This document shows, piece by piece, positions 2,166-32,455 of a stretch of 32,836 nt of DNA. The notes beneath the pieces are model-generated. The model ran no database searches and was not told where the DNA came from. It worked only from the letters and a program-made list of their open reading frames with translations. The stretch is from Octopus bimaculoides (taxonomy: Eukaryota), in NCBI RefSeq assembly GCF_001194135.2, contig NC_068989.1, forward strand, positions 58,848,659-58,881,494, written 5' to 3'. A program made the position numbers and the translations under genes. How positions within the stretch are numbered: the first letter of the stretch is position 1; each line of letters opens with the position of its first letter.

Positions 2166-2455
2166 NNNNNNNNNNNNNNNNNNNNNNNNNNNNNNNNNNN
2201 NNNNNNNNNNNNNNNNNNNNNNNNNNNNNNNNNNNNNNNNNNNNNNNNNNNNNNNNNNNNNNNNNNNNNNNNNNNNNNNNNNNNNNNNNNNNNNNNNNNN
2301 NNNNNNNNNNNNNNNNNNNNNNNNNNNNNNNNNNNNNNNNNNNNNNNNNNNNNNNNNNNNNNNNNNNNNNNNNNNNNNNNNNNNNNNNNNNNNNNNNNNN
2401 NNNNNNNNNNNNNNNNNNNNNNNNNNNNNNNNNNNNNNNNNNNNNNNNNNNNNNN

Positions 2456-12548: not shown

Positions 12549-12742
12549 ATATATATATGTGTGTGTATATATATATGTATATANNNNNNNNNNNNNNNNN
12601 NNNNNNNNNNNNNNNNNNNNNNNNNNNNNNNNNNNNNNNNNNNNNNNNNNNNNNNNNNNNNNNNNNNNNNNNNNNNNNNNNNNNNNNNNNNNNNNNNNNN
12701 NNNNNNNNNNNNNNNNNNNNNNNNNNNNNNNNNNNNNNNNNN

Positions 12743-13374: not shown

Positions 13375-14319
13375 GGATGTACGTATACTCTCCTATGCGT
13401 ATGTTTTAATTTGTGTGAGATGGATTTTGTCTGTGTATGTATGAGTTAAAATTATCTCTCGGAAAATGTTTTTTAATGAGCCGTTTCTTTTTTCCTTTTT
13501 CAACTATTAATCGCAAGCACAGCCTATGTCCCCCACCCCTCCACCAGTGACATGACTCATTCTCAATTGGGAATGAAACTGTCGCCTTTAAGTCTGCCTA
13601 TCATTCTATTTGTCGTTCAGCCTCTCTTTTATGTAAATCTTTTACACATTCTGCCTAAATCTTTTACATGTAATTACATATATAGTTCAGCATGTATAGA
13701 ATCATCCACACATGTGCGTGTACACATATTCTTAAATGTATATGTATGCATCTCTCTCTCATATATATATATATATAATTATGTTGTTTTCCGTTAGTAA
13801 CGTGTTAGAGTACAGTATAGAGCACGTGCACCTTTAGAATAACCCAGTAGTATAGGTAGCATCATTATATTCTTCGAACCCTAAAATTGCTCATTCGACG
13901 TGTGTCAATATAAAATTGAAGAAATTGGAGTGAGGAAGAGGGAGTACGGTTGGACATTTGTTTATTATTCGCTACAGTTGATTATGCAACTGTTTGTTTG
14001 CATAATGAGATCTAGTTGTGTTTCCTCAGGCGATATACAAGTGTTGTCTCCATTAGTTTGAAATCTTCGACTTCAAGGCCGTCCTCTCTCTTTGTAGTAG
14101 TTTGAATCTGGTGGTGGCTGAAATCCTCACGCTGCGAGTTGTGAGAGCGCGTTTGTCCGACTATTATGGAAGATAGTGTGTGTATACATGTACATACACA
14201 TGTATACATACATACACACATACATACAACATACATACATACAACATAGACACAGACAAACAGACAGACACACACATATATATTAGATTTCAATTGTAGA
14301 GAATAATAAACAAATGTCC

Positions 14320-14613
14320 AACCGTATTCTCTTCCTGACTCCCGACCCCTCCCCTCCTTCAAATGAGCCCACAACCTACAAGACCTATTGTTCCACAGCT
14401 TCTTCCCTAAGCCAACCTCCCAACCCGGCTCGTTCCCCTGCTCCCGTCCACGCTGCCGCACTTGCCCTTACCTCTCCAACACCACCCTCCTCAACGGCAC
14501 CCACCATCGCCCCTTTCGCATCACCGATTCCTTCACCTGCACTTCTACCAATGTCATCTACTGCATCTCCTGCTCTCTCTGGCCGTCTGTATACATCGTG
14601 CAAACGGGACGCC
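14320..14613 (+). mobile_element. Penelope-like element (Neptune-type) linker and GIY-YIG N-terminal half, pseudogenised and cut by a gap
   Basis: RPLPSFK*AHNLQDLLFHS..GSFPCSRPRCRTCPY..FRITDSFTCTSTNVIYCISCSLWPSVYIVQTGR: Cys-rich linker plus a VIY..YIxQT GIY-YIG motif. Confidence 0.85.
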
Positions 14614-15079
14614 NNNNNNNNNNNNNNNNNNNNNNNNNNNNNNNNNNNNNNNNNNNNNNNNNNNNNNNNNNNNNNNNNNNNNNNNNNNNNNNNNNNNNNN
14701 NNNNNNNNNNNNNNNNNNNNNNNNNNNNNNNNNNNNNNNNNNNNNNNNNNNNNNNNNNNNNNNNNNNNNNNNNNNNNNNNNNNNNNNNNNNNNNNNNNNN
14801 NNNNNNNNNNNNNNNNNNNNNNNNNNNNNNNNNNNNNNNNNNNNNNNNNNNNNNNNNNNNNNNNNNNNNNNNNNNNNNNNNNNNNNNNNNNNNNNNNNNN
14901 NNNNNNNNNNNNNNNNNNNNNNNNNNNCTCCCCTCTCCTCTCTCCCCTCTCCTCTCTCTCCCTCACACCTACTTCCTCCCACCCACCCACCTCTCCTCTT
15001 TTGCTCCGACTCCTACTTCTCTTCACTCCTACTCTCCTTCTTTCTTCTCTTCACTCCTACCCACCCTCTCCCTTCCTCC

Positions 15080-16490
15080 GTCAGCGTCAACCCGTTTTGG
15101 AAGGTTTGGAGGAGCGGTCCTATGTAGGACATTGGGATTGTCCACAGGAAAAATCAAAACTGCAACGACTGTGAGTATAGAAAAAACACTCAAAAATATT
15201 AAACACCTGACGATTTTTGTAACAAGAAGTCAGAAGTTCGGAGTGGTAGAAGCTAGGTTCGCATCTGAAGAAATAGCAGCAGAGCATGCAGTAGACGCGA
15301 TTAGGAATGACGAGTGGGCTTTCCTACCGAGCTACTGCGGGAAAAGAATGGCGAGAGTAAGGGTGGGTAAAATCCCACCCGAATACGACGAGACGTGGAT
15401 TATGGTGGCAGTCTTGTTTCACATGAAACAGAGTCCGAAAACATTAAAGGCAACAAGAACTCAAAAGTTGGACTTCTGGGGGTACGGGCTAGAAGTAAAA
15501 ATTCAAGCCACCCTGGAAGATCTTAATTCCATAATTGAAGAAATAGTACTGGCCGAAGGAAACAAGTTGAAAGTGGCGGTAGAGGGCAGGCCTTTGAAAC
15601 GTTTTTTGTGTAGCAAAAGAGGACACAAAAAAGCGGACTGCCCTCAAAGCAAGGAAAAAGGGAGGGAGGAGAGTTCGACGCAAAGAGAGAGAGAAACGTG
15701 GTGGAATGTGCAGAAGGAACTGAAACAGTGGATACAGAAGAGGAATTCGTGGAGGTGAAACCGCGGAAAAGAAAAAGTAGAAGGGGTTCTCCACCGAAGA
15801 AGTTGAAAAAGAGAAAGAGGGAATGGGAAGTAACGGAGAAAAAATGATGACAAGAAAACAGAAGAGGAAAGTTTGAAAGTTTTTCCTCTGGAGGTGAGAT
15901 TGAAGAGAGGTGAAGAGATGGTATTATGTAGAGTATCAAAAGAGTATACATACAAGTCAGTAATACGGGTAAAATTACCTAAGGATTACGACAAGGATGG
16001 GACTAAAGCAATAATAATAGAGCTGAACTGCTATGAGGAGTTGAAAAAAAGGTGAGACATGGGAATGGTACAGTTTGAAGTCGAGTTTGAAAAGGTGGAA
16101 CCAGTAACCGACTGGGATGACGTGACACCGCTAATAAAGGACTGTCCTTCAGATAGCCCTCAGTCAATGGATAGCGAGTAAGAAGACTGTTTTTATTGGA
16201 AAGACAATGCGTCAAGAATCTGATGTGGACTGCCGGATAATACACGGATTGGTGGCTTGCAATGGTATGTCATATGTTAGTTAATTGTTATTTAAACATC
16301 CGATAATAAGTGACTGTAAACAAAATTAATGGTACTGCGTATGATGAGGGGCGCATGCAGCCATTCATAATTTCATTGTTATCTAACCATTTCATTCATA
16401 TTTGTTCTATGTATTGTCCCCTCTGCGGTGTCTTGTATGTCCTTGTTTGTCCCCCTCTATGTTGAGCCCTTGTGGCTATAATAAAGAAAC
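15080..16490 (+). mobile_element. L1/Tx1-type non-LTR element: ORF1 (gag-like, zinc knuckle) plus 3' UTR and polyA signal; no ORF2
   Basis: Open frame about 15080-15758 ending in GRPLKRFLCSKRGHKKADCP (CX2CX4HX4C with first Cys>Arg, 15600-15641); frameshifted K/E-rich continuation to TAA 16179-16181; AATAAA at 16480-16485. Confidence 0.75.

Positions 16491-21695: not shown

Positions 21696-21778
<83 letters not shown>
21696..21778. repeat. (TA)n(GT)n microsatellite
   Basis: Direct reading. Confidence 0.9.
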
Positions 21779-21780
<2 letters not shown>

Positions 21781-22275
21781 TGTTAGGGTCACCTCTTTTG
21801 TGTATAAATGTACACTAATTTTATATGAAAAATATGTCGTCTATTGACTGTTTTATGCAGAAAAATTATGGTAGAAACTTTCTCTAATTTTTTTACCCTA
21901 CATATATTTTCTTAATATGATATTCATAATTTTGAAGAAAGTCGGCACATATATTTTCATTTACTGCCGACTGTAACTGCGCTTGCGCGGTGGATTTGAA
22001 AAGTTATAATGTATAAAGATGAGATATGTGCTGTCTATTTGTCCCATAGTTATATGTTAATTGTAGCACCATTGCTGATGAGAACACGGATAGCAAATTA
22101 TTTTATTTGTTCATTGATGTTCGAAACCTAGGTACAAGTGATAACTACTGAAAATGTTTTTATTTTTCATCGTCTTCGAAATTACTCTTAACCGTGGTTT
22201 GGGCTTTGACTGCTCCTTTTAGCATGTAAGGTGTCCTGTTAGGGTCACCTCTTTTGTGTATACATGTACATTAAT
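21775..22275 (+). mobile_element. Non-coding hammerhead-containing element with 45-bp terminal direct repeats (retrozyme-like)
   Basis: Direct repeats 21775-21819 and 22231-22275 (43/45 identical, offset 456); internal hammerhead; no ORF of 60 aa or more inside the unit; microsatellite on both flanks. Confidence 0.65.
22067..22140 (+). ncRNA. Type I hammerhead ribozyme, canonical core
   Basis: CAC-ca-TTG / CTGATGA (22075-81) / GAAC..GTTC stem II / GAAA (22123-26) / C-CTAG-G / TA, cleavage after A22134 / CAA-GTG. Confidence 0.85.
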
Positions 22276-22279
22276 ATGA

Positions 22280-22428
22280 TATATATGTGAGTGTGTGTGT
22301 ATATGTGTGTGTGTGTGTGTATACATACATACATGCATACACACATACACACATACACACACATATACATATGAATATATAAACGTATGTATATTCATAT
22401 ACGTACAAATATATATCTTATACACACA

Positions 22429-22468
<40 letters not shown>

Positions 22469-22530
22469 TATATGTGCAAATGTGGATGTGTATATGTATA
22501 TACACATACAGAAACACACACACACGTACT
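22280..22530. repeat. Compound TA/GT/AC/CATA microsatellite
   Basis: Direct reading. Confidence 0.85.
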
Positions 22531-23610: not shown

Positions 23611-23974
23611 NNNNNNNNNNNNNNNNNNNNNNNNNNNNNNNNNNNNNNNNNNNNNNNNNNNNNNNNNNNNNNNNNNNNNNNNNNNNNNNNNNNNNNNNNN
23701 NNNNNNNNNNNNNNNNNNNNNNNNNNNNNNNNNNNNNNNNNNNNNNNNNNNNNNNNNNNNNNNNNNNNNNNNNNNNNNNNNNNNNNNNNNNNNNNNNNNN
23801 NNNNNNNNNNNNNNNNNNNNNNNNNNNNNNNNNNNNNNNNNNNNNNNNNNNNNNNNNNNNNNNNNNNNNNNNNNNNNNNNNNNNNNNNNNNNNNNNNNNN
23901 NNNNNNNNNNNNNNNNNNNNNNNNNNNNNNNNNNNNNNNNNNNNNNNNNNNNNNNNNNNNNNNNNNNNNNNNNN

Positions 23975-25709: not shown

Positions 25710-26420
25710 GGCGTTAACATGTATCCGAGTAGTAGATCGGTAGCCAGTGATTGCGCTACTTCATCTTGATGGATGTAAAGCGTGTTGCTGCTCGGAGTAC
25801 CATGATTTTCGTTTGGATGGTAAGGTTGTGGTTTAGGAAAACTCGTTTTCAGAGTCTTCCGAAAGCAATACGGGCTGCGCTGTTTCTATTCTCGATGTCT
25901 TTCTGAATGGTGGAATTGCTGGACAGATAGCGTCTGTGATATAAAAATGCCTCCACATTTTCCAGAACAATGTTACATAGCCTTATGTCACTGGTGTTAG
26001 GGGGAGGTTGGCTGAGAGAGAGCTCCTTATGAAAGGATTTTCATCTTCATTCCGCTTGTGACCAAACCAATTCGGGTATACAAATTTCCGAAAAGATTCA
26101 CAGCTTCCTGTAGATTGGAAACCGAGTGCGCGGGAGTGGCATTGACATCAACGTACTGCAGCTCCTGCATCATGGCCAAAGTAGTAAGATGACGGACTCT
26201 GAAGTGGTCGGTGTTGAAAAATCCTCCGTCCATTCTGTAGCTGATTAGGGATCTCGTGGATCGTGGCACCGAGGTAGAGGAATAACAGAGTGGGAGCAAG
26301 GATGCATCCTTGCTTTAGGCTAGTTGCAATTGAGAAGGAATCGGAGAGAACGTTCTTGGTAATGAACCGGCCAGACATTTTCTAGTGTAGGACCTGGATG
26401 AGGTTCGTAAATCTATTAGT
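25710..26420 (-). mobile_element. RTE-clade LINE reverse transcriptase fragment (pseudogenised)
   Basis: SDSFSIATSLKQGCILAPTLLFLYL (GxKQGCxLAPxLF motif), QELQYVDVNA (degenerate YADD), then ..IENR..AARIAFGRL; frameshifts and stops. Confidence 0.85.
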
Positions 26421-26441
26421 GTATACATACATACATACATA

Positions 26442-27718
26442 TTGGGTCATCCCATAAATAATGCAGTTTTTTCAATTGCATAACAAAACGTCAGATGGGG
26501 ACGGGATAAACTATCTGCATCAATTTGCTATAAAATCAAGTATTAATTTTACCTTGTCCTTATTCTTTGTGCAAGTTTTGAAGAGTGCAATTCGATTTTA
26601 ACAGTTATTTTTCAAAGCTATAAAGGAAGTGACAAAGGAACATATTCGGCATATATTCCTTTATGAGTTCAATAAAAGCAACAACGCAACGGAAAGTGCG
26701 ATGAATATTAATGCAGTATATTGGGCTCGGACAATAAGCATAATCCAGAGACAACGGTGATTCCAGAAATTCGGAGACGGAAACTACAGCCTAGAAGACG
26801 AGCCTCGTCCTGGAAGATCTGTAGAGCTCGACGAAGACGCAAACCCTGGTAGGACAAAATCCTATCGTAACTGTGGAAGAACTAGCAGAGAAGCTTGGAT
26901 TTGGTCATTCAACCATTCATCGACACCTGCGTGTCATCGGAAAAATCAGCAAATTGGGTCAATGGGTTCCTCAAAAACTTTCCGAGTCCATTCGCGCGCA
27001 GAGAGTGAATGTGTGTTCTTCTTTGCTGTCACGTCTCAAAAATGAACCATTTTTGGAACGAATTGTGACTGGTGACGAGAAATGAGTTATCTATAAAAAT
27101 GTCAAGCGCCGAAGACCACTGTCTTCGGCGCTTGACATTTTTATGGAAATGGTAAGAAAAGGAGAAACGCCCCAGGCTAAAGAAGATCTTCATCCACGTA
27201 AGGTGTTGTTATCTGTTTGGTGGGATATGAAAGGTTTAGTCTCCACTTTGAACCTTTAAACCCAAACCAAACAATAACAAAGAGATCTACTGCGAACAAC
27301 TTGAGCGGCTTAAGTCAACGCTAGTAGAAAAACGAAAGGTGTTCTATCAGGATAATGGTCGGTCATATACAGCGAGGATGACATTCTAAAGGCTGCAGCA
27401 GTTTCAATGGGAAACGTTGTCCCACCCACCATATTCGCCGGACATTGCCCCATCTGATCATCATTTATTCCGCAGTCTTCAAAATCATTTGGACGGAAAA
27501 AGTATAAATTTTTCTAGACTTGGTCAGGACAGTACTGGAGGAGTATCTTTTGTCACGGACAATTTAATTTTGGAAGAGGGGCCTTGCAAGTCTACCAGAT
27601 AGATGGAAGAGCATTGTAGAGAATGAAGGAGAATATATTTTAGAGTAAAAATGAACTTTGTCTATCTTAATTTTGAAAAATAAAAGTATTAAAAAAACCG
27701 CATTATTTATGGGATGAC

Positions 27719-27752: not shown

Positions 27753-27779
27753 NNNNNNNNNNNNNNNNNNNNNNNNNNN

Positions 27780-31932: not shown

Positions 31933-32455
31933 TAAAACTGGAGATCAGTGAAAAAGAGAAAACCAATGCTGAACTATTGAGAAATCTGCAGTTACTCTAT
32001 CCAGATTACAAGTTCAGGTTTATACTTGTAATTATTGGGGCCCTGGGATGTGTAACACACTACCTAAATACCAATCTTGAGAAACTGGTTTTCTCAGGAC
32101 CAGAAAGGAGAAAGTTAATTCGAAGACTACAGATCCACTCCATCACTGGAACTGTAAAAATCTGTAAAACTTTCCAGAAGTTTATCCTTTAAATATATAT
32201 AGGCATGTCTAGATATGCAACTATTTGCATGAGAATACATACTTAAAGCATACAAATCTGTACATACGTACATACAAACGTATATACATACATACATACA
32301 TACATACATACAACAAACAAACAAACAAACAAACAAACAAAAATACTCTGTAGTTGATGTTGAAATTCATATGAAGGAGCCTTGGATCTAGGTTAGAAAC
32401 CGGTTCTTTCTCTATTGACAAGAAATCTTGAAATAAACTGGGTAATGACAGACAT
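31932..32455 (+). mobile_element. 5'-truncated R4/Dong-like (RLE-type) non-LTR element: ORF C-terminus and 3' UTR
   Basis: AELLRNLQLLYPDYKFRFILVIIGALGCVTHYLNTNLEKL..LQIHSITGTVKICKTFQKFIL* (stop 32190-32192) matches the post-endonuclease xPVxIGALG..L..L..LQ..T..I motif of R4/Dong-type elements. Confidence 0.75.

What the first reader, a model, noticed from the sequence alone, without database searches (positions are those of the whole stretch)
21775..22275. Retrozyme-like element: 456-nt non-coding ribozyme unit with 45-nt terminal redundancy
Seen: a 45-nt direct repeat (43/45 identical) 456 nt apart; one canonical hammerhead inside; additional pairings (AGTCGGCA 21940-47 with TGCCGACT 21965-72; GCGC-tt-GCGC; GCACATAT with ATATGTGC 22024-31); no protein ORF; microsatellite on both sides. 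Established: metazoan non-LTR retrozymes are small hammerhead-bearing units that yield circular RNAs and are proposed to be mobilised by PLE reverse transcriptase; PLEs favour microsatellites, and PLE pieces occur in this window. Inference: this is about 1.1 turns of cDNA from a 456-nt circular RNA, integrated in permuted form, possibly an undescribed cephalopod retrozyme family somewhat larger than those I recall. A single hammerhead cannot release a monomer here, so source arrays should exist elsewhere. Alternative: a solo PLE pseudo-LTR remnant.
Basis: partly seen in the sequence, partly recalled or inferred. Interest (0 to 1): 0.85.

Follow-up and report, generated by a model that had tools for sequence, protein, structure and literature searches.

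The report
Lone hammerhead-ribozyme retroelement copy in microsatellite
This is one stranded copy of a small non-coding jumping element that carries a self-cutting RNA motif, a kind already known from many animals, so it is real but fairly ordinary.

Summary
A 41-52 nt direct repeat spaced 456 nt apart brackets an AT-rich (32% GC) non-coding block at 21779-22275/22282. The block sits between TA/TG microsatellites and holds the only hammerhead motif in the window (22062-22148, + strand). The core is fully canonical. Helix III is a short palindrome (ACCUAGGU) of the dimer-dependent type usual in animal and Penelope-like-element (PLE) hammerheads. A relaxed descriptor found none in 20 Mb of random sequence, although no Rfam hammerhead model matched.

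The best reading is a dead-end 1.1-unit copy of a hammerhead-bearing, non-autonomous, PLE-mobilised retroelement (an animal non-LTR retrozyme monomer), inserted into a compound microsatellite.

PLE reverse transcriptase starts inside multimeric RNA and leaves a 30-40 bp "tail", which would give the same structure.

Copy number, host species and any autonomous partner could not be tested, because no collection searched returned any relative of the unit. A unit of 456 nt is within the published range (51-972 bp).

I rate it a new member of a known kind, of modest interest.

The parts
21698..21778 (.). Left flank and presumed target: (TA)20 followed by (TG)20. The last GTGT is also the sequence that precedes the unit junction inside the element (4-nt microhomology).
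21779..21819 (+). Left copy of the terminal redundancy. It is 41 nt counted from CCTG, 45 nt with the shared GTGT, and up to 48 nt (to 21826) at lower identity. It contains a 6-bp GU/AC hairpin, GUGUAU-AAAU-GUACAC.
21779..22234 (+). One full 456-nt unit. It is non-coding, 32% GC, and folds more stably than shuffles as a circle (z = -2.7, 66% paired).
22062..22148 (+). Type I hammerhead ribozyme.
- Helix I: 5' strand GUAGCACCAUUG (22063-22074) with 3' strand CAAGUGAUAACUAC (22135-22148), forming 3+3+4 bp with two bulges.
- Core: CUGAUGA at 22075-22081.
- Helix II: 22082-22122, with GAACA/UGUUC closing an extended stem-loop.
- GAAA: 22123-22126.
- Helix III: A:U plus CC/GG around a 2-nt UA, which makes the palindrome ACCUAGGU (22126-22133).
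- Cleavage: after A22134.
22235..22282 (+). Right copy of the terminal redundancy (the 'tail'). It starts 100 nt downstream of the hammerhead cleavage site and ends 141-148 nt downstream. It differs from the left copy at two positions within the 41-nt core. One is in the hairpin loop and the other changes a G-C pair to G-U.
22283..22530 (.). Right flank: an imperfect compound microsatellite of (TA), (TG), (ATAC), (CA) and (TA)21. Its (CA)n(TA)n part is an inverted match to the left flank (51 nt, 96% complementary).

Best explanation
The block 21779-22275/22282 is a single retrotransposed copy, about 1.1 units long, of a small non-autonomous retroelement that carries a type I hammerhead ribozyme. 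In current terms it is a monomer of an animal non-LTR retrozyme, a class now argued to derive from the pseudo-LTR region of Penelope-like elements (PLEs).

Proposed mechanism (inferred, not shown):
1. A source elsewhere in the genome, with a 456-nt period, was transcribed. It was either a tandem array or a circle made by hammerhead cleavage and ligation.
2. A PLE-type enzyme (reverse transcriptase plus GIY-YIG endonuclease) nicked a TA/TG compound microsatellite.
3. Reverse transcription started at an internal site about 141-148 nt downstream of the hammerhead cleavage site.
4. Copying ran through slightly more than one period.
5. The 5' junction formed where the cDNA reached an internal GGUGU that matches the (TG)n target.

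The result is a unit plus a 41-48 nt terminal redundancy, comparable to the PLE 'tail'.

As assembled, the copy has one hammerhead whose helix III needs a partner copy. It can therefore neither cut efficiently nor release a monomer, and it is probably an inert descendant.
For: Shown by tools:
- The repeat is spaced 456 nt.
- There is one hammerhead with every core nucleotide canonical, where chance predicts fewer than 0.01.
- Two copies of the hammerhead region co-fold through an 8-bp intermolecular ACCUAGGU helix.
- The unit is non-coding.
- GC is 32%, and the circular fold has z = -2.7 with 66% of bases paired.
- Both outer edges of the repeated block coincide with microsatellite edges.
- The hammerhead site is internal and intact, so the template was not a hammerhead-cleaved linear monomer.

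From the literature:
- Animal type I hammerheads lie in 150-450 bp, low-GC, non-coding repeats called non-LTR retrozymes (PMC7229834).
- Consensus lengths run from 51 to 972 bp, monomers are common, and the elements are related to PLE pseudo-LTRs (bioRxiv 10.64898/2026.07.22.740005).
- PLE hammerheads have a large helix II and a small palindromic helix III, and mostly occur as single dispersed motifs (PMC4209133).
- PLEs prefer microsatellite targets (PMC8557442).
- In the one PLE studied in vitro, reverse transcription starts at two adjacent internal sites about 85-92 nt past the hammerhead cut. This gives an optional 30-40 bp tail (PMC11167929).

Motif reading only: a PLE-like endonuclease fragment lies at 14367-14613, next to another microsatellite.
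Against: - No second copy of the unit was found in the window or in any searchable collection. Multi-copy status, which defines a transposable element, is therefore unproven.
- No Rfam hammerhead model matches, even at E<=10.
- The redundancy (41-48 nt) is somewhat longer than the published 30-40 bp tail.
- The hairpin at the presumed start site is not more stable than shuffles.
- Pfam does not recognise the PLE-like fragment, and nothing links it to this unit.
- The assembly has five N gaps, all at microsatellites, so the true number of units at this locus may be larger.
Confidence: 0.62

Rival explanations
1. The unit is a deletion derivative or remnant of one specific autonomous PLE. On this reading it is pseudo-LTR sequence plus tail from a family that still has, or once had, an RT-EN reading frame, and not a separate retrozyme family with its own arrays and circular RNAs.
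For: - The hammerhead has the PLE style: an extended helix II and a small palindromic helix III (PMC4209133).
- Most PLE hammerheads are dispersed single motifs attributed to truncated PLEs (PMC4209133).
- The redundancy is tail-like (PMC11167929).
- Non-autonomous PLE derivatives that form pseudo-LTRs are known (PMC8557442).
- A PLE-like endonuclease fragment lies in the same window.
Against: - A simple 5'-truncated copy of a multi-kb PLE would not carry a redundancy with a 456-nt period.
- No RT or EN reading frame lies within about 4 kb of the unit on either side.
- No similarity was found between the unit and the sequence around the PLE-like fragment. That fragment's 3' end is lost in an N gap.
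Confidence: 0.2
2. The 41-45 nt repeat is a long target-site duplication of host DNA. It would flank a roughly 411-nt hammerhead-bearing insertion at 21820-22234.
For: Animal retrozyme target-site duplications, when present, are longer than 4 bp (PMC7229834). Two differences in 45 nt fit a duplication made at the time of insertion.
Against: The left copy starts exactly at the end of (TG)n, and the right copy ends exactly where TA/TG repeats resume. This would require staggered cuts at both edges of a 41-nt unique island. Insertion of the whole block into one compound microsatellite needs fewer coincidences.
Confidence: 0.08
3. The locus is, or was, a longer tandem array of the 456-nt unit. It now appears as 1.1 units either because the draft assembly collapsed it or because unequal recombination shrank it.
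For: There are five N gaps in 32.8 kb, all abutting microsatellites, which points to a short-read draft assembly. Retrozymes typically occur as dimers up to large multimers (PMC7229834).
Against: The two copies of the redundancy differ at two positions, so they were assembled as distinct sequences. No N gap or other break lies inside the unit.
Confidence: 0.08
4. The hammerhead-like motif and the repeat are coincidental features of AT-rich intergenic DNA and have no mobile-element origin.
For: There is no Rfam hit and no relatives were found anywhere.
Against: The descriptor found 0 matches in 20 Mb of random sequence. A 43/45 repeat at 456 nt has E of about 1e-15. The collections searched are not built from animal genomes and returned no relative of any sequence from this window, so the absence of relatives is uninformative.
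Confidence: 0.02

Closest known systems
Metazoan non-LTR retrozymes (Cervera and de la Pena 2020, PMC7229834; Li, Clavereau and Pollet 2026 preprint, 10.64898/2026.07.22.740005), including the 300-400 nt mussel (Mytilus galloprovincialis) elements
   Same: - Type I hammerhead.
- Non-coding unit of a few hundred nt with low GC (32%).
- No LTR, primer-binding site or polypurine tract.
- Predicted self-paired RNA.
- Occurrence of monomeric copies.
- PLE debris in the same stretch of genome.
   Different: - Only 1.1 units here instead of a tandem array.
- The unit sits at the upper edge of the 150-450 bp range given in 2020, though well inside the 51-972 bp range of 2026.
- Helix II is much longer than the canonical 4 bp.
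- Copy number and circular RNA are unknown.
- A microsatellite target was not reported in those papers.
Hammerheads in the pseudo-LTRs of Penelope-like elements (Cervera and de la Pena 2014, PMC4209133) and the PLE 'tail' signature (Frangieh et al. 2024, PMC11167929)
   Same: - Large helix II, and a small palindromic helix III that implies dimeric action.
- Mostly single dispersed copies.
- Element boundary a short distance downstream of the hammerhead cut: about 85-92 nt in the Anolis Poseidon element, and 100 and 141-148 nt here.
- Short terminal extension.
- AT-rich or microsatellite target (PMC8557442).
   Different: - No RT-EN reading frame is attached.
- The period is 456 nt, not several kb.
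- The redundancy of 41-48 nt is longer than the 30-40 bp tail.
- Sequence relationship to any PLE is untested.
Older hammerhead repeats: Schistosoma Sm-alpha SINE-like elements, newt satellite 2 and cave-cricket pDo500
   Same: Short non-coding repeats with type I hammerheads whose weak helix III favours dimeric cleavage. This comparison rests on my own knowledge and on PMC7229834.
   Different: Those are highly repeated and experimentally shown to be transcribed and cleaved. Nothing of the kind is known for this unit.
Plant LTR retrozymes (PMC4918200)
   Same: Non-autonomous hammerhead-bearing retroelements thought to spread through circular RNA.
   Different: The plant elements have type III hammerheads inside roughly 350-bp LTRs, a PBS and PPT, 4-bp target-site duplications and GC above 55%. 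Here the hammerhead is type I and lies outside the 45-nt repeat, and GC is 32%.

Membership tests
Hammerhead ribozyme, type I | Conserved core: C3 U4 G5 A6 N7 G8 A9, G12 A13 A14, the A15.1-U16.1 pair, and H17 not G. Three helices, with helix I open. | tested here: met
   All core positions are canonical, G10.1-C11.1 closes helix II, and H17 is A. A descriptor scan gave 1 hit in the window and 0 in 20 Mb of random sequence.
Hammerhead ribozyme, type I | Match to a curated covariance model (the Rfam hammerhead families) | tested here: not met
   There was no hammerhead hit at gathering score or at E<=10 over 21700-22350. The likely causes are the 41-nt helix II and the 2-nt helix III 'loop', but that explanation is my inference.
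Hammerhead ribozyme, type I | Self-cleavage activity | not testable with these tools
   This needs in vitro transcription of monomeric and dimeric constructs.
Metazoan non-LTR retrozyme | Short non-coding unit (150-450 bp; 51-972 bp in the 2026 survey) with low GC (<45-50%) | tested here: met
   The unit is 456 nt with 32% GC. Its longest ORF is 40 aa, and the six-frame translation has no protein relatives.
Metazoan non-LTR retrozyme | Head-to-tail tandem arrangement (dimer or larger), so that two hammerheads flank a monomer | tested here: not met
   Only 1.1 units and one hammerhead are present at this locus. Published surveys class such copies as 'monomers' of a family (10.64898/2026.07.22.740005). 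Assembly collapse cannot be excluded.
Metazoan non-LTR retrozyme | Multi-copy dispersed family in the genome | not testable with these tools
   There is no other copy in the window. The collections reachable here returned nothing related.
Metazoan non-LTR retrozyme | Expressed as linear and circular RNA of unit length | not testable with these tools
   No transcriptome data are available.
Metazoan non-LTR retrozyme | Highly self-paired predicted RNA | tested here: inconclusive
   The circular minimum free energy is -100.9 kcal/mol, z = -2.7 against dinucleotide shuffles, with 66% of bases paired. The minus strand also gives z = -2.2.
Penelope-like element (autonomous copy or its pseudo-LTR) | An RT plus GIY-YIG reading frame adjoining the hammerhead-bearing repeat | tested here: not met
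   No RT- or EN-like frame lies within several kb of the unit. The nearest PLE-like EN motif is at 14367-14613, 7 kb away, and Pfam does not recognise it.
Penelope-like element (autonomous copy or its pseudo-LTR) | Hammerhead with a small palindromic helix III and an enlarged helix II | tested here: met
   compared with the description in PMC4209133.
Penelope-like element (autonomous copy or its pseudo-LTR) | An optional 30-40 bp 'tail' at one end, produced by two adjacent internal RT start sites | tested here: inconclusive
   A 41-48 nt redundancy is present, with boundaries 100 and 141-148 nt past the hammerhead cut. This is similar in layout to the published tail but longer, and a single copy cannot show that the ends are fixed.
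Penelope-like element (autonomous copy or its pseudo-LTR) | Insertion into microsatellite or AT-rich DNA | tested here: met
   (TA)20(TG)20 lies on the left and TA/TG repeats on the right. The preference is described in PMC8557442 and PMC11167929.
Penelope-like element (autonomous copy or its pseudo-LTR) | Sequence similarity of the unit to the termini of an autonomous PLE of the same genome | not testable with these tools
   No source genome or repeat library is available.
Plant-type LTR retrozyme | Type III hammerheads inside long terminal repeats, plus a PBS and PPT | tested here: not met
   The hammerhead is type I and lies outside the 45-nt repeats.

The most novel reading that the evidence does not exclude
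The ends of this 1.1-unit copy are not accidental. On this reading they mark PLE-style internal start sites for reverse transcription on retrozyme RNA, about 100 and 141-148 nt past the hammerhead cut and next to a GU/AC hairpin. This copy would then show the PLE 'tail' signature on a retrozyme. That would be direct structural evidence that retrozymes are mobilised by PLE enzymes from uncleaved multimeric RNA and not from circles, in a lineage (possibly cephalopods) where no retrozyme has been described.
Probability: 0.25. Interest if true: 0.5.

Novelty: new member of a known kind. Interest (0 to 1): 0.3.

Why it matters
On its own this is one inert copy of a known class of element.

Its value is as a seed. 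Suppose the source genome holds many copies. Comparing their end points would then test how animal retrozymes are copied.
- Fixed 3' ends with an optional tail would point to PLE-type internal initiation on multimeric RNA.
- Scattered permutation points would point to rolling-circle copying of circular RNA.

That question is still open in the literature (PMC7229834, PMC11167929, 10.64898/2026.07.22.740005). It would also add a lineage and a microsatellite target preference to the retrozyme record.

Tried and rejected
- **Rfam.** The gathering-threshold scan of the whole window found nothing. The E<=10 scan of 21700-22350 gave only sub-threshold miRNA and snoRNA matches on the microsatellite hairpins, which are artefacts.
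- **Other copies in the window.** Blastn with word size 7 found none.
- **Six-frame translation of the unit.** Searching it against the 5.8-billion-protein collection, hoping for spurious ORF calls on other copies, found nothing.
- **Neighbouring TE-like proteins.** The PLE-like EN fragment and a gag-like ORF were searched to reach related loci or name the organism. Both found nothing.
- **Exact-protein contig look-ups.** Three ORFs near the element were not on record.
- **DNA pattern scans.** The hammerhead and terminal-repeat patterns found nothing in metagenome, prokaryote-genome or viral collections. One search gave two 17-18-mer chance matches, and one search showed them to be unrelated.
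- **Full-text search for the sequence strings.** Nothing was found.
- **Pfam on TE-like fragments.** There was no match even at E<=10, so those identifications rest on motif reading alone.
- **tRNA scan for a SINE head.** None was found.
- **Hairpin at the presumed RT start.** It is not more stable than shuffles, so I do not use it as evidence.
- **Plant-type LTR retrozyme.** Rejected, because the hammerhead is type I and lies outside the repeats.
- **Organism.** I could not confirm that the window comes from a cephalopod.

Full report
**1. The observation**

The repeat finder reports one two-copy family, 21775-21826 and 22231-22282, 52 nt at 92% identity and spaced 456 nt. Blastn of the block against the window gives 45 nt at 95.6% with E about 1e-15.

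A base-by-base alignment shows three things:
- The match begins at GTGT, which on the left is simply the end of the (TG)n tract.
- It is perfect for 32 nt, then has two substitutions (A/C and C/T).
- It decays after TTAAT into AT-rich sequence.

The real redundancy is therefore 41 nt for certain and up to about 48-52 nt.

On the left lie (TA)20 and (TG)20. On the right lie imperfect TA, TG, ATAC and CA repeats.

Two of them share bases, so they exclude each other. The centroid fold uses one and the minimum-energy fold uses the other.

No reading frame inside the unit exceeds 40 aa.

**2. The hammerhead**

A regular-expression scan for CUGANGA...GAAA on both strands gave seven candidates. Only one has a paired helix II of at least 4 bp, the one at 22075-22126 on the + strand.

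Its parts are:

| Part | Coordinates | Sequence or structure |
|---|---|---|
| Helix I, 5' strand | 22063-22074 | GUAGCACCAUUG |
| Core | 22075-22081 | CUGAUGA |
| Helix II | 22082-22122 | GAACA/UGUUC closing a longer imperfect stem-loop |
| GAAA | 22123-22126 | GAAA |
| Helix III | 22126-22133 | A15.1:U16.1 plus CC/GG around UA |
| H17 | 22134 | A, with cleavage after it |
| Helix I, 3' strand | 22135-22148 | CAAGUGAUAACUAC |

The two helix I strands pair as 3+3+4 bp with two bulges.

A 2-nt 'loop' cannot close a hairpin. However, ACCUAGGU is a palindrome, and two copies of the region co-fold through an 8-bp intermolecular helix. This is the dimer-dependent design described for most animal type I hammerheads, and for PLE hammerheads with a large helix II and a small palindromic helix III (PMC4209133).

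A relaxed structural descriptor gave one hit in the window and none in 20 Mb of first-order Markov sequence. Chance expectation for the window is therefore below about 0.01.

Against this, no Rfam hammerhead model matched, either at gathering score or at E<=10. I attribute that to the 41-nt helix II and the minimal helix III, but this is inference.

**3. Properties of the unit**

The 456-nt unit has 32% GC. Folded as a circle it reaches -100.9 kcal/mol, with z = -2.7 against dinucleotide shuffles and 66% of bases paired. The minus strand gives z = -2.2, so strand specificity is weak.

The unit occurs once in the window.

**4. Surroundings**

The window looks like a microsatellite-rich, AT-rich draft animal assembly. 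TRF reports 55 rows, and five N gaps all abut microsatellites.

By motif reading it contains:
- a PLE-like endonuclease fragment at 14367-14613, with a CX4CX2C linker followed by NVIYCISC...YIVQTGR;
- a gag-like CCHC frame at about 15060-15755;
- a LINE-like RT fragment at about 26030-26381 on the minus strand;
- mariner-like pieces at 26761-27599.

Pfam recognised none of these, even at E<=10. They are leads, not findings.

No RT or EN frame adjoins the unit.

**5. Attempts to reach relatives**

All attempts failed:
- the six-frame translation of the unit against the protein collection;
- the PLE-like and gag-like proteins;
- exact-protein contig look-ups;
- DNA pattern scans of viral, metagenome and prokaryote-genome collections, where the only matches were chance 17-18-mers;
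- full-text searches for the sequence strings.

None of these searches returned a relative of any sequence from this window, and none of the collections is built from animal genomes. The silence therefore says nothing about copy number.

**6. Mechanism**

A redundancy with a 456-nt period means the template had that period. A plain 5'-truncated copy of a multi-kb PLE would not show it.

The hammerhead site is internal and intact, 100 nt upstream of the unit junction. The template was therefore not a hammerhead-cleaved linear monomer. It was either an uncleaved multimer or a re-ligated circle. The product does not distinguish between these two.

Published work offers a ready explanation that needs no circle. 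In the Anolis Poseidon element:
- reverse transcription starts at two adjacent sites inside the RNA, about 85-92 nt past the hammerhead cut;
- the stretch between the two sites is the optional 30-40 bp 'tail' seen in genomic copies;
- hammerhead mutants do not affect insertion in vitro (PMC11167929).

Here the two boundaries lie 100 and 141-148 nt past the cut. The layout is similar and the extension is somewhat longer.

The 5' junction coincides with an internal GGUGU that matches the (TG)n target. This fits microhomology-assisted joining, which is inference.

PLEs and their non-autonomous derivatives are known to favour microsatellites and to form pseudo-LTRs (PMC8557442).

Both outer edges of the repeated block coincide with microsatellite edges. 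That favours insertion of the whole block into one compound microsatellite. The alternative, a 411-nt insertion with a 41-45 bp target-site duplication, would need cuts at both edges of a small unique island.

**7. Comparison with known elements**

The closest class is the animal non-LTR retrozyme: type I hammerhead, units of 150-450 bp, low GC, no LTR, PBS or PPT, and expression as circles of about 170-400 nt (PMC7229834).

A 2026 preprint extends consensus lengths to 51-972 bp and reports monomer fractions from 0 to 1. It places retrozymes as sisters of PLE pseudo-LTRs (10.64898/2026.07.22.740005).

This element meets the tests for hammerhead, size, GC and non-coding status. It fails the tandem-array test at this locus. 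It cannot be tested for copy number or circular RNA.

It fails the test for an autonomous PLE because no reading frame is attached. It meets the tests for PLE-style hammerhead and target.

I therefore call it a retrozyme-type, PLE-derived non-autonomous monomer.

The only papers in the library that contain both 'retrozyme' and 'octopus' mention them in passing. A cephalopod family, if that is what this is, would be new to the record.

**8. Verdict**

The feature is real.

It is a new member of a known kind. I score interest at 0.3. The main residual value is that genome-wide end-point mapping of this family could test whether retrozymes use PLE-style internal initiation.

Noticed in passing
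window 14281-14613 (+): A frame reading ...GSFPCSRPRCRTCPYL...FTCTSTNVIYCISCSLWPSVYIVQTGR looks like the CX2-5CxxC linker plus GIY-YIG motif of a Neptune-type Penelope-like element. The non-repetitive sequence that carries it (the open frame starts at 14367) begins right after an (ATAC)n/(CA)n-type microsatellite (14181-14280) and is cut off by an N gap (14614-14927). Pfam and the protein collection gave no match.
   Followed up: partly
window 15060-15755 (+): An open frame of about 220 aa ends in a CCHC-like knuckle (CSKRGHKKADC). It may be a retroelement gag or ORF1. It has no relatives in Pfam or in the protein collection.
   Followed up: partly
window 26030-26381 (-) and 26761-27599 (+): A degenerate LINE-type reverse transcriptase fragment (KQGCILAPTL..., YVDV in place of the YxDD box) lies next to mariner-like transposase pieces (PPYSPDIAPSDHHLF). 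These are identified by motif reading only, and Pfam did not match them.
   Followed up: partly
window 2166-2455, 12584-12742, 14614-14927, 23611-23974, 27753-27779: There are five runs of N. At least four of them directly abut a microsatellite; I did not check the flanks of 12584-12742. The window comes from a draft assembly in which repeat copy numbers, including the number of 456-nt units, may be understated.
   Followed up: partly
window 21698-21748 and 22422-22472: The (TA)n(TG)n tract left of the element and a (CA)n(TA)n tract to its right form a 51-nt, 96% complementary inverted repeat 673 nt apart. The hammerhead unit therefore sits in the loop of a potential long microsatellite stem. 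The significance is unknown, and it may simply reflect the local microsatellite layout.
   Followed up: no
window 22281-22349: There are sub-threshold Rfam matches to mir-297, mir-466 and similar families (63 bits against a gathering score of 90). They fall on TG/CA microsatellite hairpins and are low-complexity artefacts.
   Followed up: yes
window 31950-32189 (+): A frame ending ...YKFRFILVIIGALGCVTHYLNTNLEKL...IHSITGTVKICKTFQKF resembles the conserved C-terminal tail seen after the RT domain of some invertebrate retroelement proteins. This rests on my recollection. It had no Pfam match.
   Followed up: no
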